Shown here: positions 1-34,616 of the stretch, piece by piece
How positions within the stretch are numbered: the first letter of the stretch is position 1
Layout of the letters: each line of letters begins with the position of its first letter
IMG/VR virus record: IMGVR_UViG_3300027899_000001
Span: 62,001-126,000 of that record
Length of the DNA stretch: 64,000 nucleotides
Strand: one strand, 5' to 3'
Notes under the pieces: generated by a model
Database searches by the model: none
The model's input: only the letters and a program-made list of their open reading frames with translations
Told to the model about the DNA's origin: nothing
Made by a program: the position numbers and the translations under genes

Positions 1-234
1 AAAAAATTGTATAGAACAATTATCAACATTTAATGTTCCATCTAAATTTATTGTTACATAATTCATTACGTCGAAATCATCAAAACCACTACGATCATTG
101 GGTTTAAAATATTTATGTAAACCTGAGTTAATTTGATTTAGCCATTTTTTAATTTTTTGAGCTAAACCAATTCCCATATCCCATACAGGATCTGAATTTT
201 CTACAAATTTTTCAAATACATATTGAGCTTTCAT
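1..234 (-). CDS. Partial ORF running off the window start; tagged putative internal head protein (MKAQYVFEKFVENSDPVWDMGIGLAQKIKKW...TINLDGTLNV)
   Basis: Hand-translated, not in the ORF track. ATG at 234, open frame to position 1. Carries the EKFxExSDPxxDMGIG tag and an INxDGTxDV segment shared with ORF 15642-16172. Late-promoter motif at 247-262. Confidence 0.85.
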   Translation of the reverse strand, partial: MKAQYVFEKFVENSDPVWDMGIGLAQKIKKWLNQINSGLHKYFKPNDRSGFDDFDVMNYVTINLDGTLNVDNCSIQFF

Positions 235-284
235 AGAATGAATTACTTTTATTTATATATTCTTTATGTCTAAATTGAATTGAC

Positions 285-310
285 AAAAAACCCCCACTGA
301 GGCTGGGGGT
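285..310 (-). terminator. Intrinsic terminator ending the tmRNA transcript
   Basis: CCCCCA-GCCTCAG-TGGGGG followed by TTTTTT on the minus strand. Confidence 0.8.
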
Positions 311-334
311 AAATCTCCTACCAACGAGTGCTTC

Positions 335-370
335 TTAAGCAGCCATTTGTAATGCGTAACTATTTTCGCC
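335..370 (-). other. tmRNA tag reading frame (A)GENSYALQMAA*
   Basis: GGC GAA AAT AGT TAC GCA TTA CAA ATG GCT GCT TAA, preceded by GTAAAC. Stop codon lies in a TGCTT/AAGCA hairpin. Resembles Bacteroidota GENNYALAA-type tags. Confidence 0.8.
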
Positions 371-548
371 GTTTACTTGCGTGTTGAGACATTCATTATT
401 TCCCTTAGTATACAATCTAAACCAAATCATCCCCATTAAAAGCAATATCTCTTTTATAAAGATTTGTGGAGATGGTGGGATCCGACCCCACGTCTTGCAT
501 ACCTACTCTATAACTAGCTCTTGCGAGCATTCTCAATATCTTAAAGAA

Positions 549-556
549 CAAATATA
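549..556 (-). promoter_or_regulatory. Bacteroidota-type -7 element (TATATTTG) upstream of tmRNA
   Basis: Matches TAnnTTTG; lies just upstream of the predicted 5' end of the acceptor piece. Confidence 0.55.
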
Positions 557-600
557 ATACAAAATCTTACAATTTGTATCATATCTTTGTTAATTATTTG

Positions 601-951
601 TTAAACTTTAGCTTTTGTTGCTCTTTTTCTTGGAGCTGTAACAGGTTTAACAGTTTCAACTGGTTGTGTTGGAGGTGCTGGAGGTGCTGGAGGATTAACT
701 ACTTGAGGATCTTCAGTAGGCGTATTAAATAATTTATTAAGACCAAAAAATCTCCAAAGTACATAATAAATAACAAATATTGCTAACCAAATTCCTAATA
801 CTCCATGAAGTAATCCTTTAGTAGCTACAAATGCAAAAAATAATATTAATATATTAACATATTGTACCCAATATTTTTTAAATTCCGGCAATGCTGTATT
901 TATTGCCCATCCTTTTAATACTTCCCATAATTTTGTTAAAAAGTTTTTCAT
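601..951 (-). CDS. Hypothetical membrane protein (about 2 TM segments, Pro-rich then basic C-terminus); possibly lysis-related
   Basis: Hydrophobic YVNILILFFAFVA and GVLGIWLAIFVIYYVLW; PPAPPAPP tail. Confidence 0.6.
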   Translation of the reverse strand: MKNFLTKLWEVLKGWAINTALPEFKKYWVQYVNILILFFAFVATKGLLHGVLGIWLAIFVIYYVLWRFFGLNKLFNTPTEDPQVVNPPAPPAPPTQPVETVKPVTAPRKRATKAKV

Positions 952-973
952 AGTTTTAAGTTTATTTTAAAGA

Positions 974-1069
974 TTATTTTTCTGATACTTTATCCCATAT
1001 AATAACTGCTAATAGGATAACTATTATACCCCCTAAGATAATAATAGTTTTTAAAAATGTTGTGTCCAT
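974..1069 (-). CDS. Small single-TM protein, 31 aa (MDTTFLKTIIILGGIIVILLAVIIWDKVSEK)
   Basis: Hand-translated; fills the gap between portal and 601-951 in the same orientation. Confidence 0.55.
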   Translation of the reverse strand: MDTTFLKTIIILGGIIVILLAVIIWDKVSEK

Positions 1070-1086
1070 GCTATTAAATTTTAATT

Positions 1087-2907
1087 TTAAATTCCTAATG
1101 TTGTTCCACCGGCTTCAGGTGCTGTTTCTGTTCCTCCTGTTTCAGTGCCAGGTTCAGTAGGAGCGCCAAGGCCAAGATCTTCTCCCCCGCCACCCATACC
1201 TAAACCGCCGCCAAGATCCATTCCTCCGCCCATTCCACCAGTTGAAGTTCCAGGAACTCCTCCTTCTTCGCCTTGAGCTGCATTAATACGTTTAACATTT
1301 TGAGCAATACGAGTAAGTTGTTCTCTTCTTTCTTTCTTATATCTTTCATTTAATTTCATATCTTCTTCAGTAAAATCCATATATTTTTCAACTAAAAATT
1401 TTGGATCAAAATACATTCCATCTACTGTTATATTTCCTTCAGCATCAACTTCTTGTTGTTTAATATTCATTAATTCACCAACTATACCAGATCCTTGTCT
1501 AGCTATGTCTCTTTTCTTAGCCTCAGTAAATAAGTTTTCTTCAATGAATTCAAGACCAATAGCACCTTTTAATGCTTTATCTTTTGCAAACTCTGGATGT
1601 TTTAAACAAAATTGAATCCAAGTAGGTTTTAATAATATATCTTGAAGTATAGAACGAATACGATTAATAAAATAATTAAATCTTATTTCTTCTCTTGCAA
1701 TGCTTTCTCCGCCAGTTGTCCAATTAGAACCGCCAGATGCACCTTCTTCTCCACTACTTGAAAATCTATCTTTTGGAATTTTTGTTTCAATAATAAATCT
1801 TTTCCAAAAATAATCAAGAGCCATTGTTCCTGTTAAATCAAATCCCTGAGGAGCAAAAGAATCCACTTCAACTTGTCCACCACCTTCTTTTGATGGAAAG
1901 ATATATTGTTTTGCAAATGAAAAATTTGGAGTTCCATTAATTGTTACTTCACCACTGTGATAATCTATTGTAACATCTTCTTTATACATTGCACGTAATT
2001 CAGATAATCGTGTTCTTGCTTTAACTTCTGATTGTGTTCCAATAGGCACAATCATTTTCATACGATATTGAGAATTAATTACATTCCAAATAATACGTGA
2101 ATTTTCCATTGTTCTAAGCATATTAAATGCTCTTACAAGTCTTTCAACATATGATAAACGAGATATAAAATTTCCTCTAGCCCATGAAATATAAATTATA
2201 TTTCCGTCAACTAATTCTCTTTGTTTTTCTGAATCTCCTCTAAATTGAATCCATACTCTAAATTCGTTACCATCTTCATCTTTTCTCATTTCTGGTTCAA
2301 GAGTAACAGGATCAAGTTCTTTAAATCCTAAAACATTTTTTGCAGGGTCAGAGCCTTCACCGTCATATATAATTTCAAATGCAAGAAATCCATCAATTAA
2401 GAATTTTTTACAATAATGCCATCCATCATGTCCAGTATTAAAACCGAATGCATAATAAACTCTTTTAAAAGATTCATTGAGATCATCTACAATTTCTTTT
2501 GCTTTTTCGGCTTTAAGAACTGATTTTAATTTTTTCGTATTAGGATATGCAAAAAAGTTAGCATCATCTTGAATAATTGTTTCATCTGCTATAACTTCTA
2601 TTACATGTTCTATTTCTCCATTCATTGCAAATCTACGAAGAAAATCTCTTCTTGTTGGATATTCTTTATCAAAAAATGCAATAAATTCTTTTTGATTAAT
2701 ATCGGCTCCGGAATATAATTGATGTTGCCCATAAAGACTATAGATTGAGTCTTCAGTTTGTTCACTAATACCAATGGCACGAGATTGCTTTATTACTCGT
2801 TCATCCCATTTCATTCCAAGAACAGAAAGATATCGGATATTTCTTTGTATGTTATCTAAAAAAGATTTAGAATTTCTATCCAAATCTCGAATTGAAAATC
2901 CTGCCAT
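1087..2907 (-). CDS. gp20: Portal protein, T4 gp20-like, with Gly-rich C-terminal tail
   Basis: ERLVRAFNMLRTMENSRIIW, LDYFWKRFIIETKIPKDRF and IAREEIRFNYFINRIR align by eye with gp20 conserved blocks. Confidence 0.85.
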   Translation of the reverse strand: MAGFSIRDLDRNSKSFLDNIQRNIRYLSVLGMKWDERVIKQSRAIGISEQTEDSIYSLYGQHQLYSGADINQKEFIAFFDKEYPTRRDFLRRFAMNGEIEHVIEVIADETIIQDDANFFAYPNTKKLKSVLKAEKAKEIVDDLNESFKRVYYAFGFNTGHDGWHYCKKFLIDGFLAFEIIYDGEGSDPAKNVLGFKELDPVTLEPEMRKDEDGNEFRVWIQFRGDSEKQRELVDGNIIYISWARGNFISRLSYVERLVRAFNMLRTMENSRIIWNVINSQYRMKMIVPIGTQSEVKARTRLSELRAMYKEDVTIDYHSGEVTINGTPNFSFAKQYIFPSKEGGGQVEVDSFAPQGFDLTGTMALDYFWKRFIIETKIPKDRFSSSGEEGASGGSNWTTGGESIAREEIRFNYFINRIRSILQDILLKPTWIQFCLKHPEFAKDKALKGAIGLEFIEENLFTEAKKRDIARQGSGIVGELMNIKQQEVDAEGNITVDGMYFDPKFLVEKYMDFTEEDMKLNERYKKERREQLTRIAQNVKRINAAQGEEGGVPGTSTGGMGGGMDLGGGLGMGGGGEDLGLGAPTEPGTETGGTETAPEAGGTTLGI

Positions 2908-2941
2908 GTTAATTCTTTATTTATTTTATATATTTAATATT

Positions 2942-3646
2942 CTATTTAGTTTTATTTAGATTATTCCAATAAGTTCTATATATCATTTCTAGATTAGCTT
3001 TTTTGAAAGATTGTTTTGAATCAAAAAATGGAATATATTGCCATTCCTCATATTCTATCATTCTTAATTTACGAATATGATTAAGACTATAAGACCTATA
3101 ACCATAATTAAAAAGAGCGTTTTGTTGATCATTAAACATTTTAAAAATAGCAGGATTTTTTCCAGTTATTGCAGCAATTTGATATTCAGCGTTTAGTGCT
3201 AAAACATTGTACTCTGTATCTCTTTCTATATCTTTTAAAAACGGTTTATATAAATCATAATAGGCTTGAAAAAATTTTACTCTTTCGCCTTTAGGTAACA
3301 TATTTAAATTTATGCCTTTAACTAATTTATTAGAATAATCATATCTTGTACAAAATAATATTGGAGTAAAATCATGAAATGTAATAACTTTTCCTGTTTT
3401 TAAATTTTGTAACTCGTTTATATTAGTTTCATTTAAATGAATAAAAGTATATACCATTCCTTCTGCAGGTACTCCTCTCTTTACTCTATTTACAATAGAT
3501 TCTTGATCAGTAGATTCAATGTCTATTAATTTTTTAGAACCCTTTAAATCTAATTTAAGATAATTATCAAATAAACGCTCAAATGCAAGATCATTGATTC
3601 CATCTATTCGTTTTAATTTTTCATGTATTAATTTTGGATCTTCCAT
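2942..3646 (-). CDS. gp2: DNA end protector protein, T4 gp2-like
   Basis: HDFTPILF...GINLNMLPKGERVKF...YSLNHIR...EEWQYIPF; adjacent to gp4-like gene. Confidence 0.65.
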   Translation of the reverse strand: MEDPKLIHEKLKRIDGINDLAFERLFDNYLKLDLKGSKKLIDIESTDQESIVNRVKRGVPAEGMVYTFIHLNETNINELQNLKTGKVITFHDFTPILFCTRYDYSNKLVKGINLNMLPKGERVKFFQAYYDLYKPFLKDIERDTEYNVLALNAEYQIAAITGKNPAIFKMFNDQQNALFNYGYRSYSLNHIRKLRMIEYEEWQYIPFFDSKQSFKKANLEMIYRTYWNNLNKTK

Positions 3647-3648
3647 AT

Positions 3649-4269
3649 CTATGCATTATTTGAGGGCCAAAATCTTCCTATTAATTTTTGAAGAGTATCT
3701 TCTGTGAATACATAAAATTTTACGCCATTTTTTTCAGCATAAGCATTCATAGCAGCAAATTTAGCTTCATTAATTAAAAATTCTTTAGCATCTAAATTAA
3801 ATCTTTTCCATTCTTTTAACGGAGCATTTGGACCAGGAGGCACAGGTTTCTTAAGTTTATTGGCAGGCTTTATATCTAAAAACATTTTTTCTACTTTTCC
3901 TTCGCCTTTATCTATTTCAATCCAGAAATCAGTATTATAGTTTTTAACAACCCAATTTTTTGGATCATTGGGATTTAGTCCATATTTTTTGCATTCTTCA
4001 AGTTTAGATACTCTATCATAATATGGAACTTTAATTGGTTCTGAAGACCAACGTTTAACTGATGGAGAAAAATCACACCATCTACAAAATGATTTCTCCC
4101 AACCTGAACGATATATTACAAGATTAGGATCGCCTAGATATTTATCAGGATTTTGAACTTTATAATATCCTTGATAGGTTTCACCCTTTTTTAATTTTCC
4201 CGCTTCAGTAAAATTATTACGTTTGGGTGTATGCCATAATTTATAATTTTGATTTAGATTATCACTCAT
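3649..4269 (-). CDS. gp4: Head completion nuclease, T4 gp4-like (likely start MSDNLNQ at 4269)
   Basis: GYYKVQNPDKYLGDPNLVIYRSGWEKSFCRWCD...WSSEPIKVPY...YNTDF...DIKP. Confidence 0.85.
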   Translation of the reverse strand: MSDNLNQNYKLWHTPKRNNFTEAGKLKKGETYQGYYKVQNPDKYLGDPNLVIYRSGWEKSFCRWCDFSPSVKRWSSEPIKVPYYDRVSKLEECKKYGLNPNDPKNWVVKNYNTDFWIEIDKGEGKVEKMFLDIKPANKLKKPVPPGPNAPLKEWKRFNLDAKEFLINEAKFAAMNAYAEKNGVKFYVFTEDTLQKLIGRFWPSNNA

Positions 4270-5014
4270 TGCAGATATTTTTATATTTACATTTTTCGCC
4301 ATGCCATTTTCCATAATTGCCGGGGTCAAAATCTTTATTACAATAGTTACAATGTTTATATTTTCTTTTATGTGATGATATACTCAATTTTTCTTTAGTT
4401 TGTGAAGAATGCTTTCGCCCTTTATTAGCTAATTGTAATTTATATTTATATTCTTGTATTTTTATTTTCCCTTGTTCTTCTCCATATTTTTCAATTAAAC
4501 TTTCGCAAACCGATCCCTTAAAGAATGCATTATTTTTAAGTTTTTTTGCATTTGATATACGTTTTTTTGTTTCGATTGAACGCTTATGTCCATAAGTTGC
4601 TTTAGAAATATTATTTTTCCATTCTGTTGTTAATTTAAGTCCTAATCTAGCTTTACCTATTTTTTGTTTTGTTATTTTAGAATGCCCAGTTAATGAAATT
4701 AATTCTTTTACATATTTATAGTCACGAGAAGAAATTTTATAGTTTTCTTTATGTATACCAAATATCATTTTATGAAATGCTAATGTGATTTTTCTGTTTC
4801 CTTTATATATGTATGTAAGCAATTTGTGACAAATATAATGTTCTCTTGCTGTCAATAAAACTAAATTTTCTTTTTCGTTAGTTCCGCCTAAACACAATGG
4901 AATTATATGATGATTTTCATAATAAACATAATCTTCTTGATTTTTTCTTAACTTAATTCTATTTTCAAGTTTTGCTACTTGAATTATAGATTCATAGACT
5001 TTTAGATGATTCAT
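4262..5014 (-). CDS. Free-standing HNH homing endonuclease with NUMOD3-like repeats
   Basis: ENHHIIPLCLGGTNEKENLVLLTAREHYICH; GHKRSIETKKRIS and GRKHSSQTKEKLS repeats; overlaps gp4 start by 8 nt. Confidence 0.85.
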   Translation of the reverse strand: MNHLKVYESIIQVAKLENRIKLRKNQEDYVYYENHHIIPLCLGGTNEKENLVLLTAREHYICHKLLTYIYKGNRKITLAFHKMIFGIHKENYKISSRDYKYVKELISLTGHSKITKQKIGKARLGLKLTTEWKNNISKATYGHKRSIETKKRISNAKKLKNNAFFKGSVCESLIEKYGEEQGKIKIQEYKYKLQLANKGRKHSSQTKEKLSISSHKRKYKHCNYCNKDFDPGNYGKWHGEKCKYKNICNE

Positions 5015-5212
5015 TTATTATCATTATTAGTCATTTTAAAAACTTCCTATATGTACATTTATATAGCCTTCTTTTACTTTCTTTTGAAAAAAATCTGCAT
5101 AAATTTTTACAGAATCGCTTTCTCTACATATATGAAGGCGCCCTTCAGCCATTTCGTTTTCAAGAAATTTTTCAAAAGAACTTTTCTTTTTTCTAAATAT
5201 ACGCATTTTTAT

Positions 5213-5563
5213 TTATATATTATAGATCTTATTACTTGACACCGAAATTTTCTTTGATTTTGGCATATTTCCATATAATTTTCTCCATCCTTTTGCGAAA
5301 CCGTTTTTAATTATTTGTGTAAAATATGCGAATGCATTTTGAGATTTTGCCGGATCATATCCTCGCCAATATTGAAAACAATCCATAACTGCAAATGATA
5401 TACAATCTTCTCGATCTTCAGGATAAATATAGTTTAATTTAGTAGAAAATTTCTTTGCCATTAACATAAACATATCCAAAGCAATTGGAGTTAATTTATC
5501 AGCTTCTTTAGATTTTATTATTTCGTTTCGCAGGTCGGCATTCTTTACATGATGTAGTCCCAT
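5213..5563 (-). CDS. gp55: Late-transcription sigma factor, T4 gp55-like (short)
   Basis: EDREDCISFAVMDCFQYWRGYDPAKSQNAFAYFTQIIKNGF. Confidence 0.8.
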   Translation of the reverse strand: MGLHHVKNADLRNEIIKSKEADKLTPIALDMFMLMAKKFSTKLNYIYPEDREDCISFAVMDCFQYWRGYDPAKSQNAFAYFTQIIKNGFAKGWRKLYGNMPKSKKISVSSNKIYNI

Positions 5564-5652
5564 AATTTCAATTTTAATTAATTTTTAATTTATATGAACA
5601 AAACGCGACATTGTTTTGTCACGTTTAATTTTTAATTAATTTTTAACACTTA

Positions 5653-6153: not shown

Positions 6154-6365
6154 TAGTCTAATGCATCTATTACTTCATCTAAAAGAGCTTTAATAGTAGG
6201 ATCTGTTATTTGATATTTAGCTCTAACTAATTTTTTAATTAATAATTTTTTTCTTCTGAAATCTCCTTTAAAATTAAGAGTTATTCCAAATACAACGCCT
6301 TCAAGATTGTCTCCTTTTTCAAAATCTTCATCTGAATAAATTTCATTAATAGTTTTTGCTCTCAT
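6153..6365 (-). CDS. Hypothetical protein
   Basis: Tightly packed ORF in a minus-strand operon. Confidence 0.55.
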   Translation of the reverse strand: MRAKTINEIYSDEDFEKGDNLEGVVFGITLNFKGDFRRKKLLIKKLVRAKYQITDPTIKALLDEVIDALD

Positions 6366-6366
6366 A

Positions 6367-17276: not shown

Positions 17277-17627
17277 TTACCATCGTCCACCTCGTTCATC
17301 TTCCCATTGTTGTTCTTGTTGTTCTTGCCAATATCTTTCTTGATCTCTTGCAAAATTTTCTTGTTCCTGTTGATGCATTAATTCACCATAACAATCAACA
17401 CACATTGTATGTACAACTCTGTCACTATTTTCACCAAATGTATCTATAATAGCTTTTGATCTTTCTATTTCTTCTGATTTTATAAGTTTTTCACCTTCTA
17501 TATCTATTAAATCTCCGCAATTATGACATTTATATACAGTTCCTTGATGTCCAATACCCATTTTATGAATAGGATCTGCCTCTTCTTCAAATTTTTCATA
17601 TAAATGTTCTTTAACGATTTTCATCAT
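17277..17627 (-). CDS. Tagged protein with Zn-ribbon cargo (start MMKIVKEH)
   Basis: MKIVKEHLYEKFEEEADPIHKMGIG; CHNC...CVDC. Confidence 0.7.
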   Translation of the reverse strand: MMKIVKEHLYEKFEEEADPIHKMGIGHQGTVYKCHNCGDLIDIEGEKLIKSEEIERSKAIIDTFGENSDRVVHTMCVDCYGELMHQQEQENFARDQERYWQEQQEQQWEDERGGRW

Positions 17628-17952
17628 ATAATATAAATACTGTTTCATCTAAATTAGGTTCTTCTTCTACAGTTATTCCAAATTCTTTATTTGCCATTGT
17701 TAAATATTTCGGCCATTCTTTTACGAAAAGTTTAAATCCTTCTTGAGATTTTTGATCCATAAAACCGTCTTCGTAAACATTTAAAAATCCTAAATATCTA
17801 TCATCTGTGCGATCTAATTGATAATCTTCAGCTACACTTTTTAAAAAATGACGAATAAGTTTTTCTTTCCAATTAATTCCTATTCTTAAATCATCAATGG
17901 GATCAGATTCTTCTTCAAATCTCTCGTATAATATTTCTTTAACTAATTTCAC
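17611..17952 (-). CDS. Tagged putative internal head protein
   Basis: MKLVKEILYERFEEESDPIDDLRIG. Confidence 0.75.
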   Translation of the reverse strand: MKLVKEILYERFEEESDPIDDLRIGINWKEKLIRHFLKSVAEDYQLDRTDDRYLGFLNVYEDGFMDQKSQEGFKLFVKEWPKYLTMANKEFGITVEEEPNLDETVFILYDENR

Positions 17953-18464
17953 TTTTGTAGTTTTTGTATAGTTTTTAATAATTCAGAGGATTTACTATTT
18001 AAATGTTTTATATCTCTAATGAAAGATTGATCTACAGGTTTAAATTTACTTGTAAAAATTCCTGATGTGCTGATGTAAGTATTATTAGGTGTTATGAATT
18101 TATCTTTTGTATGAGAATAAACAACAACATCTGTAAATGAGACTTTAGATCCAGAAACTTTTACAATTTTTACAAGTTCTTGAACTAAGTTTGTAGTTAG
18201 TCCGTGATAACCTCCAAATGGACCTCCATATTGCCACCATAATTGATCAGCTCCATTTTTTATTGCGTAATTAGATAATCTTGAAATTCCATACTGAATG
18301 CCTAAAACAAGTTGTTCATTTGCAGACATTAGTTTAAGATTTTTCCCAGTTACTACATGATCAAGTTCTTTTTGAATTTGATTTAATTCTCCAATTCCCA
18401 TATCATGTATAGGATCGCTTTCTTCTGAGAATTTTTCGTTTAGATGTTCTTTAACAAGTTTCAT
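17949..18464 (-). CDS. Tagged putative internal head protein
   Basis: MKLVKEHLNEKFSEESDPIHDMGIG. Confidence 0.75.
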   Translation of the reverse strand: MKLVKEHLNEKFSEESDPIHDMGIGELNQIQKELDHVVTGKNLKLMSANEQLVLGIQYGISRLSNYAIKNGADQLWWQYGGPFGGYHGLTTNLVQELVKIVKVSGSKVSFTDVVVYSHTKDKFITPNNTYISTSGIFTSKFKPVDQSFIRDIKHLNSKSSELLKTIQKLQK

Positions 18465-18950: not shown

Positions 18951-19550
18951 TTAGGGTTTAATTTTTCTACTATTTCTTCTACAAACTCGGCATTTTCCGT
19001 TTTTAATTTTTAATGGGTGAACTTCTTCTCCGCATTCTGTACATTTTATGAAATGATTTTTGTCTGCATCTTCATATTGTATTCTGCTTAAAGGATAACT
19101 TCCAGATATAGGTTGATTTCTTTCTTTATTAGAAAATGGGGTTTGAAAATTTTCTTGTAATTTTGATTTAAGCATAGTTATCAATTTATCGTACTCTTCT
19201 GGCATTAAACATATTTCATAATCCAATACAATGATTATTGGATGTGCTTTTAAAAGTCTAATATCTCCTATTTCTTGACGTAATTCTTCATCATCTGTTG
19301 TTAAAAAATATCTATCGTTAAATTCCATTACTTTAAATTTAGAATCTTTTTCTCCTATTAAATCAATAAAATCTTTTATAGTTTGTTTCATTTCTCTCCA
19401 TTCTTCAAGATCTTCATGTTTTCTACGGGCCCATTTTTTAATATATTGGAATATTTGACTTAATGCAAAGGAAGATAAATACGCTACACTTATATTACCT
19501 AATGCATTTAGATCTTCATTTAAATTTTCTTTTACATATTGTGCTTTCAT
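18951..19550 (-). CDS. Hypothetical protein with leader ending LNE and C-terminal Zn-ribbon
   Basis: MKAQYVKENLNE leader without the DPI tag; CTEC...CRVC. Confidence 0.6.
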   Translation of the reverse strand: MKAQYVKENLNEDLNALGNISVAYLSSFALSQIFQYIKKWARRKHEDLEEWREMKQTIKDFIDLIGEKDSKFKVMEFNDRYFLTTDDEELRQEIGDIRLLKAHPIIIVLDYEICLMPEEYDKLITMLKSKLQENFQTPFSNKERNQPISGSYPLSRIQYEDADKNHFIKCTECGEEVHPLKIKNGKCRVCRRNSRKIKP

Positions 19551-19565: not shown

Positions 19566-19898
19566 TTATTCGCTTATGTATATTTTTTCATCTGATCCTA
19601 TTGTGTACATTTCACCATTATTATCTAACAAATTTACTTCGCGTTGATTTTTTCTACCTTTAACTTCCTTTACTTTTATAGTTTGTGTTTTCCATTCATG
19701 TCCACGGTTTCCCCATTTATGCATTTTTCCAGTAACAGTTCTTCCAGTTAAATTATTATCTAAATAACGAAGCCAGTTTTTTCCTGCTTTGTCCATGATT
19801 TCTTCAAACACATAATCAAGATTTACGCCACCAATACCCATATCTGCTATTGGATCAGTTTGATCATCGAATTTTTCGTTAATAAGATGTGCTCTCAA
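19566..19898 (-). CDS. Tagged putative internal head protein (TTG start)
   Basis: MRAHLINEKFDDQTDPIADMGIG; late-promoter motif at 19908-19923. Confidence 0.75.
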   Translation of the reverse strand: MRAHLINEKFDDQTDPIADMGIGGVNLDYVFEEIMDKAGKNWLRYLDNNLTGRTVTGKMHKWGNRGHEWKTQTIKVKEVKGRKNQREVNLLDNNGEMYTIGSDEKIYISE

Positions 19899-19933
19899 AA
19901 TAATTAGTTTATTTTATATATTCAGCAAAGCAA

Positions 19934-26656: not shown

Positions 26657-26670
26657 ATATTATTTTTGTA

Positions 26671-28377: not shown

Positions 28378-28439
28378 AATTTAATAATTTATTTTATATT
28401 TTATTAAAGAATGGCCAAATAGTTTTAAGTATTTTCTTT

Positions 28440-28772
28440 TTATTTAAAAGAAGGCGGAACAAAGTCTAATGCTCTTTGCATGAATATGTTAGTTACTTCC
28501 CAATCTTCGCCTCCTATATCTCTTGCTGCAAGATATCGTCTATATGCTTTTTGTTTATCTTGAATAAGTTTGCACATTGTACTTGCTAATCTTGCTTCTT
28601 TTGCATGGTCGCCATTTGCTTTTTTAATGATATCTTTGACTCTCATTATATCTTTTGCTTCTGGATGCATCCATTTAGGATAGTGTTCAAGTCTGTGCTT
28701 AACACCAATTTTCATATCCTGAATAGGATCTGATTCTTCAGTAAACTTTTCAAAAACACGCCAGGCTTTCAT
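28440..28772 (-). CDS. Tagged putative internal head protein
   Basis: MKAWRVFEKFTEESDPIQDMKIG; own late-promoter motif at 28783-28798. Confidence 0.75.
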   Translation of the reverse strand: MKAWRVFEKFTEESDPIQDMKIGVKHRLEHYPKWMHPEAKDIMRVKDIIKKANGDHAKEARLASTMCKLIQDKQKAYRRYLAARDIGGEDWEVTNIFMQRALDFVPPSFK

Positions 28773-28810
28773 AGAATATACATTTATTTTATATATTCTA
28801 TTTATTTAAT

Positions 28811-29434: not shown

Positions 29435-29625
29435 TTTTTCTTTTTTCTTTTTAATTTTATTGTATTCGTCTTATCATCAAATACAATTTTGAATTTATCT
29501 CTTAAATCTTTGGGTATGTAAACATCTTTCCATACTATTCTCCAAAGATATTTTTTCCAATTGGCTTGATTATCATTTTCATCAATCCAAATAATTGGTT
29601 TTTTTAATTTCTTATTCTTTTTCAT
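29431..29625 (-). CDS. Hypothetical basic protein, possibly leaderless
   Basis: ATG lies 4 nt after a TATATTTG element. Confidence 0.55.
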   Translation of the reverse strand: MKKNKKLKKPIIWIDENDNQANWKKYLWRIVWKDVYIPKDLRDKFKIVFDDKTNTIKLKRKKKK

Positions 29626-29629
29626 AATA

Positions 29630-29667
29630 CAAATATAATAAAAAATCCTGATATAAAAAAATCAGGA
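29630..29667 (-). promoter_or_regulatory. Hairpin (terminator-like) directly followed by a TATATTTG promoter element
   Basis: TCCTGAT/ATCAGGA inverted repeat (29646-29667), T-run, then TATTATATTTG on minus. Confidence 0.5.
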
Positions 29668-29907
29668 GTCCTTTTTTTGCGATTCTTTGTAAGATTCTTC
29701 TTCTGCTTCATAACACTTCTCACACCTCTTATACGGTTTTCCTGTATTTTGATTATACATAATTTTCCAAGTATGTGGCTGTAAAGGCATATGATTATCT
29801 GGATGTCCGGCATATGTTGTTTGACATTTTTCACAACCTTTGCAATCTGGAAAACTATCAGTAGTCCATGCTATTGCTTCTCCACATTTACATCTTAATG
29901 TTCTCAT
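29662..29907 (-). CDS. Small Cys-rich Zn-finger protein
   Basis: CKCG, CKGCEKC, CEKC. Confidence 0.6.
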   Translation of the reverse strand: MRTLRCKCGEAIAWTTDSFPDCKGCEKCQTTYAGHPDNHMPLQPHTWKIMYNQNTGKPYKRCEKCYEAEEESYKESQKKDS

Positions 29908-30889
29908 ATTTTTTTATTTTTGTATAATCTTTATCAATGATAATTAAATATGTATAGCCTAATGCTTTAGTATATTTTTCTTTTTTCTTATTTTGTTTTT
30001 CAAATCTATTATAATAATATTTACTTTTACATTCAATTATTAGATTTAACGATGGAATATAAAAATCAGGAAAATATATTTTATTTTTATTTTCATATTT
30101 ATATTTGATTGCTGATCCATTTTGTATGTCAGGATATTTATCATAAAATTTTTCTAAAAAATCCAATTCATATGATCCACGATAATAAATATTTGTATTT
30201 TTAAAATTTTTAGCTTTAAGCCCACTTTTTTGTTGTTTTTCAAATATTTCTTTATTTTGCATTGGATTTTCGACATCATATTTTTTTAAACAACTATTTA
30301 TTTTATGAGTTTTAACAACATTTGATGAATTTGGAGATACTGTACCATATTTTTTTAAAGACGTTTCTTGCTTTTTGGTCTTTATTTTTTTATTTTTTAA
30401 AGGATGTTCACCATATAAATTGATCATAATTTCGTTTCCTTTTTCTCTAATTTTTTTATTACTTAATCCCCATTCGCAGCCATAATTTTTAAATGTTGTT
30501 TCTTTTGATTTTTTTCTATTTGTATAATATTCATCATTGTATTTTTGTTTTTTAATTTTTTTAATTTTATTTTTAATTTTTTTTGATTGAAATACATTTT
30601 TAACACCAAATTTTTTAAAAACTTCTTCTTCTGTTCTAATCTGATTCCATTTTTTTTCGCATTCTCCTTTACAACAAGTTTTATATCCTCCTGCTATATT
30701 ATTAAATACGGTTTCTTTATTGCATATTTTGCATAACCCCTCTTCATTTTCACGTATATATTTATCAAAATATTCTTTAGCTTTATGTTTTCTTACTATA
30801 TGATTTATTATACCATGTTTAGAAATAGATGTTAACCCGCATTCTTCACATATAAAAAAATTATTTTGATTTTGTTGAAACCTTTTCAT
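29888..30889 (-). CDS. Free-standing endonuclease, family copy 3
   Basis: CEECGL..H..RKH; KYDVENPMQ; YRGSYELDFLEKFY...YFPDFYIPSLNLIIECK; late promoter at 30901-30914. Confidence 0.75.
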   Translation of the reverse strand: MKRFQQNQNNFFICEECGLTSISKHGIINHIVRKHKAKEYFDKYIRENEEGLCKICNKETVFNNIAGGYKTCCKGECEKKWNQIRTEEEVFKKFGVKNVFQSKKIKNKIKKIKKQKYNDEYYTNRKKSKETTFKNYGCEWGLSNKKIREKGNEIMINLYGEHPLKNKKIKTKKQETSLKKYGTVSPNSSNVVKTHKINSCLKKYDVENPMQNKEIFEKQQKSGLKAKNFKNTNIYYRGSYELDFLEKFYDKYPDIQNGSAIKYKYENKNKIYFPDFYIPSLNLIIECKSKYYYNRFEKQNKKKEKYTKALGYTYLIIIDKDYTKIKKYENIKM

Positions 30890-30924
30890 GATATAATAGT
30901 TTATTTATATATTCATGAAAAATT

Positions 30925-32094
30925 TTAAAAAAGTGAACGCGCGTATATTAAATTTCCTGGCACTGGATTAAATCCTACTGCCTCTAATATTCTATTAAAA
31001 GGCTCTACTATAGTTTTAGTAAATTGTAAATCATAATCGACTGCTGGCGCAAATTCATATGGAAAGTTTCCCGGTAGGAAACCGAATACTTCATTTTCGT
31101 CTTTTGTATAATAAAATTTAACTTTATCTCCTGTCTTAATTATATTATACTTTGTTTTCCATTTACTATTTAATATAATATGATTATATACTGCTGAAGC
31201 TCTAACATTTTGTCCACACTTTGGAGCTAATCTAACTTGTTTTTTATCTTCTAAACAATATTTTTCATAATCACCAAGAGATTGTGTTTTTGCAACATCT
31301 TCTGGATTTTGCATAACATATTCTTTCTTGTATTCTTTTAATTTTTTTACAACATCTGAATATAAAAGTCCTTTTTCTTTTTCACAAACCAGTTTAATCA
31401 TTTCTTTAAGAACTTTTCTTGCAAATTTTGGAGTTGATCCTTGCATAATTTCTATGCCAACATGTTTAATTTTTTCTTGAGGAGGAAAGAAAACACCAGG
31501 ATCTTTCCATGCTAAATTCAAAATATATTTTTTCTTTGCAACCATTGTTGCGGAATAAGAAATTTTTTCCAATTCTAAGTCTTGTATATTTTTAGTATTA
31601 TATCTTTTAGCGTATTCTTCAAATTTTTCTTTAAGATATAAATTTAATCTCAATTCTTTTATCTTTATTATAAAATCTACTTGACTTCCTGAATAATCAC
31701 AAGATTTTAACATTGAATCAAAGGTTACATATACACTATCAGTATCCATATAAATTGTAACTGTAGGATCATTTATTTTATTTGCATATGTAATTCCTAA
31801 TTGTTTATGTAATTCTTTATCAAGATGCCATTCATTCATAAAGTATTCATCAATAGTACGACTTGCAAATTTTGCTACATCTTGTCCTTGAAGAGTTACT
31901 GCCTCTGCTACATTAATATTAAATCCTACAAAATACTGAGAAGCACATGCACCATAAACTGAGTTCAACCAAATTTTAATTGATTGCTCTAAATTGAAAT
32001 ACTTTTCTTTTTCTAATTTTAGACGTTCAATTTCAGCTTCTAATTCTTCTATTGAACAGGTGTTAGGATTTATTTTTGTGAGAGTAAACTCCAT
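30925..32094 (-). CDS. gp43: Family B DNA polymerase, C-terminal half of a split gp43
   Basis: KIWLNSVYGA (region III), YMDTDSVY (region I), KKKY; no exonuclease or DxxSLYP region. Confidence 0.85.
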   Translation of the reverse strand: MEFTLTKINPNTCSIEELEAEIERLKLEKEKYFNLEQSIKIWLNSVYGACASQYFVGFNINVAEAVTLQGQDVAKFASRTIDEYFMNEWHLDKELHKQLGITYANKINDPTVTIYMDTDSVYVTFDSMLKSCDYSGSQVDFIIKIKELRLNLYLKEKFEEYAKRYNTKNIQDLELEKISYSATMVAKKKYILNLAWKDPGVFFPPQEKIKHVGIEIMQGSTPKFARKVLKEMIKLVCEKEKGLLYSDVVKKLKEYKKEYVMQNPEDVAKTQSLGDYEKYCLEDKKQVRLAPKCGQNVRASAVYNHIILNSKWKTKYNIIKTGDKVKFYYTKDENEVFGFLPGNFPYEFAPAVDYDLQFTKTIVEPFNRILEAVGFNPVPGNLIYARSLF

Positions 32095-32154
32095 ATGTTT
32101 TACTTTTTATATAGAGAATTGAATATAGAGTTTTTGTATTAACATAGATTTAAC

Positions 32155-32565
32155 TTAAAATCCACGTTCTATTATAATAAATCTATTATTGAACATTATT
32201 CGAGAAACTATCATATTATTACCAGGATACCAATTTTTAACAATCTTTTCCGTTTCTTTTAATTCTTCTTTAGCCCTATTTAACAGATCTTTATCTCTGA
32301 ATCTCATAAAATTTATTGTTGTTACAGTCGGGCTATGACGAATAACGTTTGTAACAAGAACATAATGATCAGGAAGTATTTTAAATCCACTATAAAAGGC
32401 AGTAAAAGCACCAGATCGATTATGTGTAACTGCTACTGCTTTTTTCGCTTGTATAATAGCGCCAGGACGAAGAGTTTCAAACGACATTCCACCAATACCC
32501 ATATCATGTATAGGATCAGATTCCTCAGTAAATTTCTCGTTTATATGTTCTCTTACTAGTTTCAT
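32155..32565 (-). CDS. Tagged putative internal head protein (KOW/SH3-like cargo)
   Basis: MKLVREHINEKFTEESDPIHDMGIG. Confidence 0.75.
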   Translation of the reverse strand: MKLVREHINEKFTEESDPIHDMGIGGMSFETLRPGAIIQAKKAVAVTHNRSGAFTAFYSGFKILPDHYVLVTNVIRHSPTVTTINFMRFRDKDLLNRAKEELKETEKIVKNWYPGNNMIVSRIMFNNRFIIIERGF

Positions 32566-34616
32566 GGTTCTAAATCTATTCTTCCATCAATTTGTTTACA
32601 ATATTTACGTACTTTTGCATTAGTAAATTTTCCTGGATTACCTCCAGCATAAAAATTACCAGTTCTGCCGCGTCCTCTGGTTACTATTTTAGGACAACCT
32701 TCTAAAGACATTAATTTATTATCAGAACATCTAAAATATCCATGAACTTCCTTAGGAAATCCTCGTAATGAAGTTAAACCCTGATGTCCAAAATCACACC
32801 ACCCGTCTACAATATTAAAAGTTATATATGATGGTAATTGGTCAATATGAACATCTATTTTTCCTGCTAAATTTCCGTGTACATCAATAGTACCATCTTT
32901 TCTAATTACATATGGCGATTTATAATTTTGATCATCGTTTTGTTCTATTTCTATATTTTTATCAAACCATTCTGCAATTTTTTTCACTATGCCAATTCCC
33001 ATATCATATATAGGATCAGATTCTTCTGTAAATTTTTCATTTATTCTTGGATAATAAGATTCTGTAATTGTATCCATTTTTTCCGGTTTCATAATAGCTA
33101 CACTAACATTAGAAGACATTGTTGTGGGTTTTCTAATATAAACTCTTATTTTATTTAATTCTCCACAAATTTTAGCAAAATACGTTATTTCAATTCCTGT
33201 TGCTGAATTGCTGTCTTTAATTAGAATTCGTCCATCAATATTTTTATTAGATATATTATAAATTGATACACCGCCATTTTGTTCACGTTTAGTTATATCA
33301 ACTTTCTCTGGATTTCCCGTGTCATCTCCAGTAAATATAAAAAATGTTGGATTTTTTCCCAATCCCATAGAATATGATAATAAACCGTTAATGAATAAAT
33401 TATCTTGAGATACTTTAGTTAATAAATAATTAAGTAATTTAAGAGATGCATATTTTATTTTGGCAGAATTAACTTTTTTAAATCCATCAATAGGATCTTC
33501 CTTTGCATATTTATATAAATGGGCTTCTTTTATTTGAGATATATTAATATCAACTTTTTTTCTTTCGTCTATAATTCCTTGTAAAAATCTATTGTTATCC
33601 CAAGTTAATTCTTCTTTTGTAAGATCATATTTATCTTTTACTGTTTCAGATTTACGTAAATATCCTTTTCCCCATCCCGCTTGAGATTTACTTTCTTTTA
33701 ACGATATGCCTAATATGATTTTACTATCATCATATGATTTTAGATCTTCAACAAATATACTATTATAATCTCCTATTTTAAATTCTTCTGTTTGCTTTTC
33801 TTTAGCTTTATTCCAAGTTTCTAATACTTTTGATTCTTGACCGGGCTTAACTAAAATAAAATCCATAGGACACCATTTATCAACTTCTTTCTTAGTAAAT
33901 CCTAAACTTGTTGCTGCTTCTTCTTTAATTTTCTTAAAAAGAGCATTATTTCTATAAGGAATCCAATCTTTATATTCTGTAGTTTTTAATTTTTTTCCAA
34001 CAGCCATAGCATTAAATATGCTAAGAAGAATTTTTTCATTAAAATTTGCAATATCTTTTGCAAGTTCAGCTACAATAGAATCAATTTCTGATTGTTCTAC
34101 TCCTTTAATACCTTTTGTTCCTATATCTTTTATTAATAATCCTAAAAGCTTTTTATATTCTGCTTCGTTTTTATCTTTAATATTAAAGGGTTTATATTGA
34201 TTATCAATATCATCTGTTTCAAAAAAGAAAATAGCAAGCCCTTCTTTAAATTCTGTAGTAGTTCTTGTAGTTTTTCCTCTATAATTGCTATCTGAAAATA
34301 CAAGATTTTTTTCTGTTCCATTAAGATTAAAACTAATAGATTTAAATTTTGATGATATGTCTAAACCTTCTTCACCTTCTTTTGGCTCTAATATCTTAAT
34401 AGTAGTCGGATCTACATTAATATTATATTTTTTAATAACTTCTTTAAAATCATTTACTAATTCATCAATAGTTACAACTCCTTTATTTTTTAAACGAGTA
34501 TCTTTAGAATGAATGCTATATTTCTCAGGAAATTCTGCAAGAATTTTATTTCTTATAGAGCCCACTGTGTTTAATTTGTCTATTTTTTCTAATAATCTGG
34601 GATAAAAAGACATCAT
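32562..34616 (-). CDS. Large protein: possible nuclease-like N-terminal region, internal tag, then LRR-like C-terminal domain
   Basis: KWCPMDFILV...GISLKE; internal RINEKFTEESDPIYDMGIG; LTSLRGFPKEV..LMSLEGCPKIV; late promoter at 34621-34636. Confidence 0.65.
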   Translation of the reverse strand: MMSFYPRLLEKIDKLNTVGSIRNKILAEFPEKYSIHSKDTRLKNKGVVTIDELVNDFKEVIKKYNINVDPTTIKILEPKEGEEGLDISSKFKSISFNLNGTEKNLVFSDSNYRGKTTRTTTEFKEGLAIFFFETDDIDNQYKPFNIKDKNEAEYKKLLGLLIKDIGTKGIKGVEQSEIDSIVAELAKDIANFNEKILLSIFNAMAVGKKLKTTEYKDWIPYRNNALFKKIKEEAATSLGFTKKEVDKWCPMDFILVKPGQESKVLETWNKAKEKQTEEFKIGDYNSIFVEDLKSYDDSKIILGISLKESKSQAGWGKGYLRKSETVKDKYDLTKEELTWDNNRFLQGIIDERKKVDINISQIKEAHLYKYAKEDPIDGFKKVNSAKIKYASLKLLNYLLTKVSQDNLFINGLLSYSMGLGKNPTFFIFTGDDTGNPEKVDITKREQNGGVSIYNISNKNIDGRILIKDSNSATGIEITYFAKICGELNKIRVYIRKPTTMSSNVSVAIMKPEKMDTITESYYPRINEKFTEESDPIYDMGIGIVKKIAEWFDKNIEIEQNDDQNYKSPYVIRKDGTIDVHGNLAGKIDVHIDQLPSYITFNIVDGWCDFGHQGLTSLRGFPKEVHGYFRCSDNKLMSLEGCPKIVTRGRGRTGNFYAGGNPGKFTNAKVRKYCKQIDGRIDLEP

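What the first reader, a model, noticed from the sequence alone, without database searches (positions are those of the whole stretch)
1..34616. Shared capsid-targeting-like leader plus conserved 15-aa tag on 12 ORFs with unrelated cargo
Seen: 17 copies of xxE-(K/R)FxExxDPxxxxxIG (consensus EKFTEESDPIHDMGIG) in 12 ORFs (<1-234, six in 11584-13848, 15642, 16162, 16656, 17277, 17611, 17949, 19566, 28440, 32155, one internal in 32562). N-terminal copies usually follow a 10-aa leader such as MKLVREHINE. Codons vary synonymously between copies, which points to protein-level selection. Cargo differs: ankyrin repeats, LRR-like, Zn-ribbon, KOW/SH3-like, unknown. Several copies sit right behind late-promoter motifs. 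Known: T4 internal proteins share a 10-aa capsid targeting sequence (MKTYQEFIAE in IPIII) removed by gp21 after (I/L)xE; M1, K2, E6, I8 and E10 match here. Inference: a modular system for loading many effectors into the head and injecting them with the DNA. The KF...GIG part would remain on the mature proteins and is unexplained (docking, ejection or localisation signal).
Basis: partly seen in the sequence, partly recalled or inferred. Interest (0 to 1): 0.9.

Follow-up and report, generated by a model that had tools for sequence, protein, structure and literature searches.

The report
Shared address tag on megaphage proteins
A giant uncultivated T4-like phage puts the same 25-residue tag on at least 60 otherwise unrelated small proteins, often strung together as beads on one chain. 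The tag most likely marks them for loading into the virus head and delivery into the host, but that is not yet shown.

Summary
In detail: 17 copies of the motif lie in 12 minus-strand ORFs, against 0.0004 expected by chance. Synonymous codon variation shows that selection acts on the protein.

The window is part of a 405-kb uncultivated T4-like megaphage that encodes a gp20-family portal and a gp55-like late sigma factor.

The tag is about 25 residues long: a leader MK(L/I)V(R/K)E(H/Y)(I/L)NE, then KFxEExDPIxD(M/L)GIG. Internal copies keep the pattern φ-K-E-x-φ-N-E before KF.

- at least 82 tags in at least 60 ORFs in about 300 kb of this genome;
- 1,610 protein clusters in metagenomes, with up to 10 tags per protein;
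- none in 185,579 prokaryote genomes, cultured phages, Pfam or the literature.

The unit is a tag plus a domain of about 100 residues (ankyrin, LRR-like and about 100 other clusters). One unit is a separate gene in one phage and a bead of a polyprotein in another. AlphaFold2 places the tags in low-confidence linkers.

Best reading (about 0.4): a tag for capsid targeting and maturation cleavage on a library of ejected proteins.
- For: 5/10 in-register match to the T4 IPII/IPIII leader, a late-promoter-like motif, conserved position beside the portal, and a D(M/L)GIG core like encapsulin targeting peptides.
- Against: no prohead protease was found and there is no proteomics.

The main rival is an in-cell docking motif.

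The parts
1..234 (-). 5' part of tagged ORF A. The full gene is 276 aa and runs past the window start. The tag is at 163-234 (leader MKAQYVFE, then KF..GIG). The cargo is an LRR-like domain.
247..260 (-). Late-promoter-like motif ATATATAAATAAAA in front of ORF A.
11584..13848 (-). ORF B, a 754-aa six-tag polyprotein. Tags are at 13771-13848, 13366-13443, 12976-13053, 12640-12717, 12298-12375 and 11965-12042. The beads are ankyrin, helical, unknown, two near-identical small domains, and LRR-like.
   Evidence: Ank_2 1e-11; AF2: confident domains at residues 50-135, 215-270 and 660-754, with every tag in a segment of pLDDT below 50
13857..13870 (-). Late-promoter-like motif (1 mismatch) in front of ORF B.
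15642..16172 (-). ORF C, 176 aa, GTG start. The tag is at 16098-16172. The cargo is an LRR-like domain.
   Evidence: (AF2 pTM 0.79; tag residues 1-16 have pLDDT below 50)
16162..16659 (-). ORF D, 165 aa. The tag is at 16582-16659. The cargo is unknown; it belongs to an 8-member cluster.
16656..17261 (-). ORF E, 201 aa. The tag is at 17184-17261. The cargo is ankyrin repeats.
   Evidence: Ank_2 8.5e-13
17277..17624 (-). ORF F. The start judged likeliest from the tag is the ATG at 17624 (MKIVKEHLYEKF); the ORF listing begins it at 17648. The tag is at 17547-17624. The cargo is a CxxC...CxxC zinc-ribbon-like domain with a Q/E-rich tail.
17611..17952 (-). ORF G, 113 aa, GTG start. The tag is at 17875-17952. 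The cargo is unknown.
17949..18464 (-). ORF H, 171 aa. The tag is at 18387-18464. The cargo is unknown.
18951..19550 (-). An ORF in the same operon with a leader-like N-terminus only (MKAQYVKENLNE) and no KF..GIG part.
   Evidence: leader-only proteins in related loci
19566..19898 (-). ORF I, 110 aa, TTG start, first gene of the 19.9-15.6 kb tagged operon. The tag is at 19827-19898.
19908..19921 (-). Exact ATATATAAAATAAA motif in front of ORF I, preceded by a terminator-like hairpin.
28440..28772 (-). ORF J, 110 aa. The tag is at 28701-28772 (leader MKAWRVFE).
28783..28796 (-). Exact promoter-like motif in front of ORF J.
32155..32565 (-). ORF K, 136 aa. The tag at 32488-32565 is the consensus MKLVREHINEKFTEESDPIHDMGIG. 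The gene is translationally coupled to ORF L.
32562..34616 (-). ORF L, 684 aa. It has an untagged N-terminal part of about 510 aa, an internal tag at 32988-33065, and then an LRR-like domain.
34621..34634 (-). Exact promoter-like motif in front of ORF L.
1087..2907 (-). Context: T4-type portal protein (gp20 family). The same promoter-like motif lies at 2920-2933. Tagged genes follow the portal in three related genomes.
   Evidence: (Portal_T4 3e-50)
5213..5563 (-). Context: gp55-like late sigma factor, which would read TATAAATA-type late promoters.
   Evidence: phrog_234 4.1e-17

Best explanation
The motif is a portable tag of about 25 residues that marks small late-expressed proteins, and each bead of multi-bead polyproteins, for incorporation into the assembling head of a T4-like megaphage.

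Proposed mechanism, all of it inferred:
1. The leader, φ-(K/R)-E-x-φ-N-E, works like the T4 capsid targeting sequence and ends in a T4-type maturation site (I/L/V-x-Glu, cut after Glu).
2. The following KFxEExDP-I-x-D-(M/L)-G-I-G stays on the mature unit. It is the docking element for a single conserved partner inside the prohead: the scaffold core, or the inner face of the HK97-fold shell. The docking would use a hydrophobic-Gly-hydrophobic hook like that of encapsulin targeting peptides.
3. The prohead protease cuts polyproteins at each tag, so separate genes and fused beads give the same products.
4. The units (ankyrin, LRR-like, Zn-ribbon and about 100 other small domains) leave the head with the DNA and act early on host proteins.

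Shown: the tag, its protein-level conservation, its modular and linker position, its scale, its restriction to viral contigs, and its late-type promoter and structural-gene neighbourhood.

Not shown: packaging, cleavage, ejection, the partner, and any cargo function.
For: - The leader matches the T4 IPII/IPIII leader at 5 of 10 positions in register, including the final I-x-E. One related leader-only protein starts MKIVKEYIAE, a 6/10 match. Among ORFs scored as untagged, only 1 of 297 reaches 5/10, and that one is a tag variant the regex missed.
- In 409 internal copies the residue before KF is Glu in 99%, and position -3 is L/V/I in 94%. This is the T4-type cleavage context. T4 CTS biology is described in PMC3012670 and PMC5694885.
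- The phage has a T4-type portal and a gp55-like late sigma. All five heads of tagged transcription units in the window carry the same TATAAA(A)TA motif as the portal gene.
- Tagged genes lie immediately downstream of the portal in three diverged genomes, where T4 has its core proteins and protease. Four more lie inside a gp13-neck/gp25-baseplate operon.
- The same unit is a single-tag gene in two genomes and bead 4 of a four-tag protein in a third, at 48% and 42% identity. This is as expected if beads are separated after translation.
- AF2 puts tags in low-confidence linkers outside the folded domains.
- D(M/L)GIG equals the core of encapsulin targeting peptides: native NTGGDLGIRK, consensus DGSLGIGSLKG. 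There, L-G-I inserts into a pocket of an HK97-fold shell (PMC7925596).
- Cargo units are more basic than untagged proteins: median pI 8.8 against 7.0, p=0.01.
- Precedent: diverged SPN3US ejection-protein paralogues share an identical 15-residue N-terminus that carries the cleavage motif.
Against: - No gp21-type (or any) prohead protease was seen. It is absent from the Pfam lists of the regions walked and from phmmer searches with T4 gp21 over about 300 kb of the genome (20, 60, 64, 74, 86-89, 93, 94). About 100 kb was not inspected.
- The best-conserved part lies after the proposed cut. That has no T4 precedent, where the leader is removed.
- The load would be very large: at least 60 tagged ORFs, about one ORF in five.
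- Per gene, the promoter motif is not enriched on tagged ORFs (12/57 against 38/252, p=0.32). It also precedes homing-endonuclease genes, uvsX and a SiaC-like gene.
- The leader is not measurably amphipathic.
- The encapsulin resemblance is five residues.
- The only Gp23-family protein found (308 aa) lies far away in a sugar-metabolism cluster.
- There are no proteomic, structural or expression data.
Confidence: 0.4

Rival explanations
1. An in-cell docking motif. The tag is a short linear motif that plugs many interchangeable binding domains (ankyrin, LRR-like and others) into one hub inside the infected cell. The hub could be a protease or unfoldase, a transcription or replication factory, or a compartment. 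This would resemble the F-box, PRANC or BTB adaptor families of large eukaryotic viruses. The proteins would not be packaged.
For: - The recognisable cargo is made of protein-binding repeats.
- The family takes about a fifth of the ORFs, as adaptor families do in giant viruses.
- The tag is disordered on its own, as for a motif that folds on a partner.
- The conserved part extends well beyond any cleavage site.
- No prohead protease was found.
Against: - One copy per protein would do, yet up to 10 well-kept copies occur per polypeptide, each before its own domain.
- It does not explain the in-register likeness to the T4 leader, the invariant Glu, or the conserved place next to the portal.
- No candidate hub was identified.
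Confidence: 0.25
2. A polyprotein junction only. The tag is the recognition site of a processing protease that is not the head protease, for instance one of the phage's papain-like peptidases. Alternatively it is a structural spacer between beads. On single-unit genes it would be a relic of fission.
For: - Tags sit in linkers between domains at a regular spacing, median 124 residues.
- Fusion and fission of the same units occur between genomes.
- A Peptidase_C1 gene is present in the genome.
Against: - N-terminal copies (255 in the sampled set) are as conserved as internal ones. They add a conserved MK(L/I)V start that has no role in a junction.
- A relic would decay.
- A site of 22 conserved residues is far longer than known viral protease sites.
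Confidence: 0.12
3. An anchor for surface display. The tag binds the outside of the capsid or another virion surface and displays varied binding domains, like Hoc-type decoration.
For: - The promoter is of late type, and tagged genes lie among neck, baseplate and portal genes.
- The cargo consists of varied binding modules.
Against: - Ankyrin and zinc-ribbon domains are typical of the cytoplasm.
- Decoration proteins usually carry Ig-like folds, and none was detected.
- Many tags per chain and about 60 different proteins are hard to fit on a regular lattice.
Confidence: 0.08
4. A DNA- or RNA-level element. The repeat would be conserved for recombination (cassette shuffling) or for translation initiation on near-leaderless mRNAs, not for the peptide.
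For: - Starts lie only 5-20 nt behind the promoter-like motif, with no Shine-Dalgarno sequence.
- Units are shuffled between genomes.
- A few copy pairs share exact runs of 20-25 nt.
Against: - Invariant residues use synonymous codons, including TCN and AGY for Ser, and the third position is the least conserved.
- The median longest shared run is 11 nt.
- Internal copies are always in frame and far from any start.
Confidence: 0.03

Closest known systems
T4 capsid targeting sequence (CTS) of internal proteins IPI/IPII/IPIII and Alt
   Same: A conserved N-terminal leader of about 10 residues sits on otherwise unrelated small proteins. The leader ends in I-x-E. It matches the IPII/IPIII leader from the T4 record at 5 of 10 positions in register. 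The phage has a T4-type portal and a gp55-type late sigma. [quoted passage not shown]
   Different: Here a further 15 strongly conserved residues (KFxEExDPIxD[ML]GIG) follow the putative cut. The tag also occurs inside proteins, up to 10 times. There are at least 60 tagged ORFs instead of about 4. No gp21 homologue was found, and there is no evidence of packaging.
Propeptide-bearing ejection and inner-body protein paralogues of giant phages (phiKZ, SPN3US)
   Same: These are large phages with many head-internal proteins. Diverged paralogues keep identical N-termini that contain the maturation cleavage motif ending in Glu (PMC5694885).
   Different: Their motif is (S/A/G)-x-E and their propeptides are often longer than 100 residues. 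Here position -3 is I/L/V, as in T4. The tag is short, repeated, and attached to unrelated folds. There is no sequence similarity and no chimallivirus context.
Encapsulin cargo targeting peptides
   Same: A short peptide loads unrelated cargo into an HK97-fold shell. The core is two hydrophobic residues separated by Gly (L-G-I): native ...GDLGIRK, consensus ...SLGIGSL... (PMC7925596). The tag has D-(M/L)-G-I-G.
   Different: Encapsulin peptides are usually C-terminal and about 10 residues long. The likeness here is five residues and was not tested structurally. The phage's shell protein was not securely identified.
Polyvalent proteins of phages and conjugative elements (Iyer et al. 2017)
   Same: One polypeptide carries 2-15 disparate domains. 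It is predicted to be injected with the DNA and to be cut into pieces (PMC5512222).
   Different: Polyvalent proteins carry enzymatic effector domains and built-in zincin-like peptidases, and no repeated junction tag. Here the beads are small non-enzymatic domains. Pfam recognises only ankyrin. Each bead is preceded by the same tag.
Adaptor multigene families of large eukaryotic viruses (ankyrin-PRANC/F-box, BTB)
   Same: One short conserved module is joined to many variable protein-binding repeat domains, and the family takes up a large share of the genome.
   Different: There is no sequence or fold relation. The tag is N-terminal and repeated within chains. This is a resemblance in logic only.

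Membership tests
T4-type CTS / internal head proteins | N-terminal leader of 10-20 residues ending in (L/I)-x-E | tested here: met
   The leader is MK(L/I)V(R/K)E(H/Y)(I/L)NE. Glu at -1 occurs in 95% of N-terminal and 99% of internal copies; I/L/V at -3 in 98% and 94%. It is 5/10 identical to the IPII/IPIII leader of the T4 record.
T4-type CTS / internal head proteins | Conserved leader on otherwise unrelated, fast-evolving cargo | tested here: met
   302 distinct cargo units fall into 105 BLASTP clusters, 72 of them singletons.
T4-type CTS / internal head proteins | gp21-family prohead protease encoded by the same phage | tested here: inconclusive
   phmmer with T4 gp21 found no hit in any held sequence. 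No protease family of that kind appears in the Pfam lists. About 100 kb of the 405-kb contig was not seen, and the phmmer search is not sensitive.
T4-type CTS / internal head proteins | Late (or early plus late) expression, timed with head assembly | tested here: inconclusive
   A gp55-like sigma is present. A TATAAA(A)TA motif precedes all five tagged unit heads and the portal gene. It also precedes other gene classes, and it is not enriched per gene. There are no transcript data.
T4-type CTS / internal head proteins | Protein present in virions, with the leader removed | not testable with these tools
   The phage is uncultivated, and no proteome is available.
Encapsulin targeting peptides | Short peptide with a hydrophobic-Gly-hydrophobic core next to a flexible linker | tested here: met
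   D-(M/L)-G-I-G occurs in 74-95% of copies, position by position. The tag lies in low-pLDDT segments. The reference motifs come from PMC7925596.
Encapsulin targeting peptides | Binds the luminal pocket of an HK97-fold shell protein | not testable with these tools
   Only single-chain prediction was available, and chimeric inputs are not accepted.
Encapsulin targeting peptides | Cargo gene adjacent to the shell gene | tested here: not met
   The only Gp23-family gene found (L074 12408-13334, Pfam 1.5e-21) has glycosyltransferase neighbours and no tagged genes next to it.
Polyvalent proteins | Several disparate domains in one polypeptide | tested here: met
   There are 2-10 tags (units) per protein. 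ORF B combines ankyrin, helical, small beta and LRR-like beads.
Polyvalent proteins | Enzymatic effector domains and a zincin-like processing peptidase | tested here: not met
   Pfam on 65 cluster representatives and 10 long multi-tag proteins gave ankyrin, one DUF6267, and marginal single-member hits (best: Helicase_C, 3.9e-4).
phiKZ/SPN3US-type propeptides | Cleavage motif (S/A/G)-x-E | tested here: not met
   Position -3 is I/L/V, not S/A/G.

The most novel reading that the evidence does not exclude
A clade of T4-like megaphages carries a programmable protein-loading system. One 25-residue tag combines a T4-like maturation site with an encapsulin-like hook for the HK97-fold shell. It loads on the order of a hundred different small binding domains into the head. 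These are made either singly or as cleavable beads-on-a-string polyproteins, and are injected as a diversified anti-host arsenal. The tag would then be a natural, transferable address for packing arbitrary proteins into a phage capsid.
Probability: 0.3. Interest if true: 0.9.

Novelty: new variant of a known kind. Interest (0 to 1): 0.77.

Why it matters
If the tag is a head-loading address, it shows that very large phages can carry dozens of different proteins into the cell under one short code. It would also link T4 capsid targeting with encapsulin cargo loading, and offer a compact tag for packing chosen proteins into capsids.

Even if the function is different, this is an unreported tag. 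It is nearly invariant, found only in viral sequence, present in about 1,600 protein clusters, and takes about a fifth of the ORFs of a 405-kb phage. It gives a handle on a large block of unannotated ('dark') megaphage genes and on how such genomes build and reshuffle small domains.

Tried and rejected
- Pfam and PHROGs have no model of the tag. The only overlapping models are two PHROGs of unknown function: phrog_9262 at 6.1e-11 (driven mainly by the ankyrin part) and phrog_15000 at 0.009.
- tblastn of a 40-aa tag against 50,697 cultured or deposited phage genomes, including Lak megaphages, gave no match at E<=1.
- The scan of 185,579 prokaryote species genomes found no relative.
- Full-text search for the peptide strings found nothing relevant. 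A search for ankyrin or multigene families in huge phages also found nothing.
- A region-restricted homologue search from ORF L returned only itself, so one search was wasted.
- The hunt for the head protease and major capsid protein used phmmer with T4 gp20/21/22/23/24/67/68/18/19 on all loci and found only the portal. Ten contig walks turned up neck, baseplate and fibre genes, giant ORFs, and one 308-aa Gp23-family protein, but no protease.
- tblastn of T4 gp21 against the phage collection was not informative for megaphages.
- The idea that the leader is an amphipathic helix was tested and not supported: hydrophobic moment 0.24 against a shuffle mean of 0.28.
- Per-gene enrichment of the promoter motif on tagged ORFs was not significant.
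- Fold searches with the LRR-like cargo model gave no significant match in PDB or BFVD.
- Adenovirus, ASFV and poxvirus protease motifs (GG-X, AG-X, (M/I/L)XGX-G) were compared with the tag by eye and do not fit.
- An RNA- or DNA-level explanation was rejected on codon evidence.

Full report
**What the window is.** The portal protein of the window is encoded on JGI metagenome contig Ga0209668_10000002 (405,016 bp), and the window is record positions 62,001-126,000 of it. G+C is about 27%. Genes are densely packed, mostly on the minus strand.

It is a T4-like phage. Pfam finds a T4-type portal (gp20 family, 3e-50), gp46/gp47-like nuclease subunits, a DnaB/gp41-like helicase, UvsX/RecA and a family-B polymerase fragment. 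PHROGs finds a gp55-like late sigma factor at 5213-5563 (4.1e-17). The nearest portals in deposited phages are those of Lak megaphages and other huge uncultivated phages, at 38-40% identity. No similar DNA exists in the phage collection.

**The observation.** Composition predicts 0.0004 copies, and 200 Markov resamples gave none. Invariant residues use synonymous codons (Ser TCN/AGY; Gly GGA/GGT/GGC; Ile ATA/ATT). Mean nucleotide identity is 70%, and the third codon position is the least conserved. So the peptide is what is selected.

**Anatomy of the tag.** I used 255 N-terminal and 409 internal copies from metagenome proteins.
- The N-terminal form is M-K-(L/I)-V-(R/K)-E-(H/Y)-I-N-E-K-F-x-E-(D/E)-S-D-P-I-x-D-(M/L)-G-I-G.
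- Internal copies lack only M-K-L. They keep φ(-7), K(-6), E(-5), φ(-3; L/V/I 94%), N(-2; 72%) and E(-1; 99%), then K-F (F 99%), D-P, D, I-G.
- The module is therefore about 22-25 residues long and does not depend on position.
- A few proteins carry the leader alone, without KF..GIG. Examples are MKIVKEYIAE... on a 533-aa protein and LKLVREHINEE... on a lysozyme-domain protein. In the window, 18951-19550 starts MKAQYVKENLNE. This suggests two sub-modules.
- The leader is not measurably amphipathic.

**Scale and distribution.**
- A profile of the 17 copies finds 1,610 cluster representatives (E<=0.001) among 1.84 billion proteins. Of these, 598 score at E<=1e-10, and one 1,203-aa protein has 10 tags.
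- A word-based search found 175 small proteins with a near-invariant N-terminal tag and unrelated remainders.
- In IMG/VR, 118 stretches were confirmed; the best 80 give 63 distinct loci, which come from at least 15 metagenomes.
- In about 300 kb of this one phage there are 82 distinct tags in 60 ORFs. In a census of about 208 kb of that sequence, tagged ORFs make up about one ORF in five (57 of 309).
- One related contig has 47 tags in 25 consecutive ORFs within 20 kb.
- The tag is absent from 185,579 prokaryote species genomes, from deposited phage genomes, from Pfam and from the searchable literature.

**The unit.** Tags are spaced by a median of 124 residues, and the cargo between them has a median length of 104. 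The 302 distinct cargo units fall into 105 BLASTP clusters. The largest are ankyrin (45), an unknown helical family (44), an LRR-like family (40) and a small beta family (12); 72 are singletons. Pfam recognises almost nothing except ankyrin.

AlphaFold2 of ORF C gives a confident cargo domain (pTM 0.79), with tag residues 1-16 below pLDDT 50. The fold has no significant match in PDB or BFVD. AlphaFold2 of the six-tag ORF B gives three confident domains, with every tag in a low-confidence linker. Cargo units are somewhat basic: median pI 8.8 against 7.0 for untagged proteins of the window, p=0.01.

**Fusion and fission.** Downstream of the portal, this phage has three single-tag genes. One relative has two genes carrying one and two tags. 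Another has a single four-tag protein of 488 aa. The third gene here is 48% identical to bead 4 of that polyprotein and 43% identical to the first gene of the other relative. Units therefore work both as separate genes and as beads. This is most simply explained if beads are separated after translation, or if each acts independently.

**Expression and neighbourhood.** A motif (G)AATATATAAAATAAA lies 5-20 nt before the start codon, with no Shine-Dalgarno sequence. It contains or nearly matches the T4 late -10 element TATAAATA. It precedes the portal gene and the heads of all five tagged transcription units in the window. With a gp55-like sigma present, a late promoter is the natural reading.

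It is not specific to tagged genes, however. It also precedes homing-endonuclease genes, uvsX and a SiaC-like gene, and per-gene enrichment is not significant. A different, sigma-70-like motif precedes other genes at 56-63 kb.

Elsewhere in the genome, four tagged genes sit inside an operon with gp13-like neck and gp25-like baseplate genes. The portal, membrane-protein, tagged-genes order is conserved in three diverged genomes. In T4 that position holds gp67, gp68, gp21 and gp22.

**Comparison with T4.** Read from the T4 record, IPII and IPIII begin MKTYQEFIAE. Among 297 ORFs of this genome scored as untagged, only one reaches 5/10, and that one is a tag variant the regex missed. Among tagged ORFs, 14 of 42 do. 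In T4 the leader directs internal proteins to the scaffolding core and is removed by gp21. Foreign proteins fused to it are packaged (PMC3012670; PMC5694885). SPN3US offers a precedent for diverged ejection-protein paralogues with identical N-termini that carry the cleavage motif.

**The part that stays.** KFxEExDPIxD(M/L)GIG has no T4 counterpart. Its end, D-(M/L)-G-I-G, equals the core of encapsulin targeting peptides: native NTGGDLGIRK, consensus DGSLGIGSLKG. In those, two hydrophobic residues separated by Gly enter a pocket on the inside of an HK97-fold shell (PMC7925596). This is a five-residue likeness and only a lead, because I could not run a peptide-shell prediction.

**What I could not find.** No head-maturation protease turned up, neither by phmmer with T4 gp21 nor in the Pfam lists of ten contig walks. 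The only Gp23-family protein found is a 308-aa ORF (Pfam 1.5e-21) inside a large sugar-biosynthesis and glycosyltransferase cluster. About 100 kb of the contig remained unseen.

**Verdict.** The head-loading interpretation is the best single explanation (about 0.4). It rests on resemblance and context, not on any direct evidence of packaging or cleavage.
- The main rival (about 0.25) is an in-cell docking motif for a family of adaptor-like binding proteins.
- A pure polyprotein-junction role (0.12) and a surface-display anchor (0.08) are weaker.
- A nucleic-acid-level element is disfavoured by the codon evidence.

Whatever its role, the tag defines a large, unreported, virus-restricted protein family with an unusual beads-on-a-string architecture.

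Noticed in passing
window 335-516 (-) (ARAGORN span 244-556): A phage-encoded permuted (two-piece) tmRNA with tag peptide GENSYALQMAA. It lies between the portal operon and tagged ORF A. Rfam tmRNA_permuted scores 64.5 bits (gathering threshold 47).
   Followed up: partly
window, 5-20 nt upstream of many starts (e.g. 2920-2933, 19908-19921, 28783-28796, 34621-34634, 47230-47243, 49047-49060, 51502-51515, 58196-58209): The late-promoter-like motif ATATATAAAATAAA sits so close to the ATG, with no Shine-Dalgarno sequence, that these mRNAs would be leaderless or nearly so.
   Followed up: partly
window 57300-57312, 58122-58134, 62561-62573 (-): A second promoter-like class, TTTCTGTCAAA...ATTTACAYTAYAG, lies in front of genes at 56-63 kb (DUF932, a Fib_succ_major-domain protein and others). 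It may be the early class.
   Followed up: partly
window 46266-53267 (-): The topoisomerase II large-subunit ORF (51534-53267) ends in an intein-splicing segment. It is followed by homing-endonuclease-like ORFs (50497-51489, 48134-49039, 46266-47228) and by another ORF with a weak intein hit (47305-48141). The gene looks broken up by inteins and homing elements.
   Followed up: no
window 29888-32094 (-): The family-B DNA polymerase ORF is only 389 aa and covers Pfam positions 152-413 of 453. It lies next to a DUF7487 homing-endonuclease-like gene, so the polymerase gene may be split. DUF7487 genes recur at 10643-11524, 29888-30889, 46266-47228, 53254-54198 and 55313-56353.
   Followed up: no
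window 39849-44920 (+): A plus-strand island with higher G+C (0.31-0.35). It holds a collagen-repeat protein (342 aa), an ORF of 1,187 aa with no family match, and a 159-aa ORF. It is probably a fibre module.
   Followed up: no
L074 12408-13334 and L076 1-20303 (same phage, record about 277-296 kb): A short (308 aa) Gp23-family capsid-like protein lies inside a cluster of about 20 kb. The cluster holds glycosyltransferases, a T4 AGT-like enzyme, deoxysugar synthesis genes, methyltransferases and an acetyltransferase. This hints at glycosylation of the virion or the DNA.
   Followed up: partly
L072 / L073 (same phage, record about 194-219 kb): A run of giant ORFs without any family match (1,751, 5,002, 1,341 and 1,578 aa) on one strand. 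It ends in a tagged ankyrin gene.
   Followed up: no
L001 14444-15076 (+), just outside the window start; orthologues at L031 10504-11121 and L046 11494-12069: A conserved protein that always follows the portal-proximal tagged genes. Its N-terminus, ...DYLEKLYEES..., resembles a degenerate tag (compare ...HINEKFTEES...). The rest is rich in K, E, G and P. It is a candidate core or scaffold protein, or a partner of the tag.
   Followed up: partly
L046 18476-19372 (+): In a related phage, a lysozyme-domain protein with a membrane-anchor-like segment starts with the leader only (LKLVREHINEE), directly behind the promoter-like motif. The orthologue in this phage (L069 11605-12573) has a different N-terminus.
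   Followed up: partly
window 58216-58593 (+): A SiaC-family regulatory phosphoprotein homologue (Pfam 4.6e-25) lies behind an exact copy of the late-promoter-like motif.
   Followed up: no
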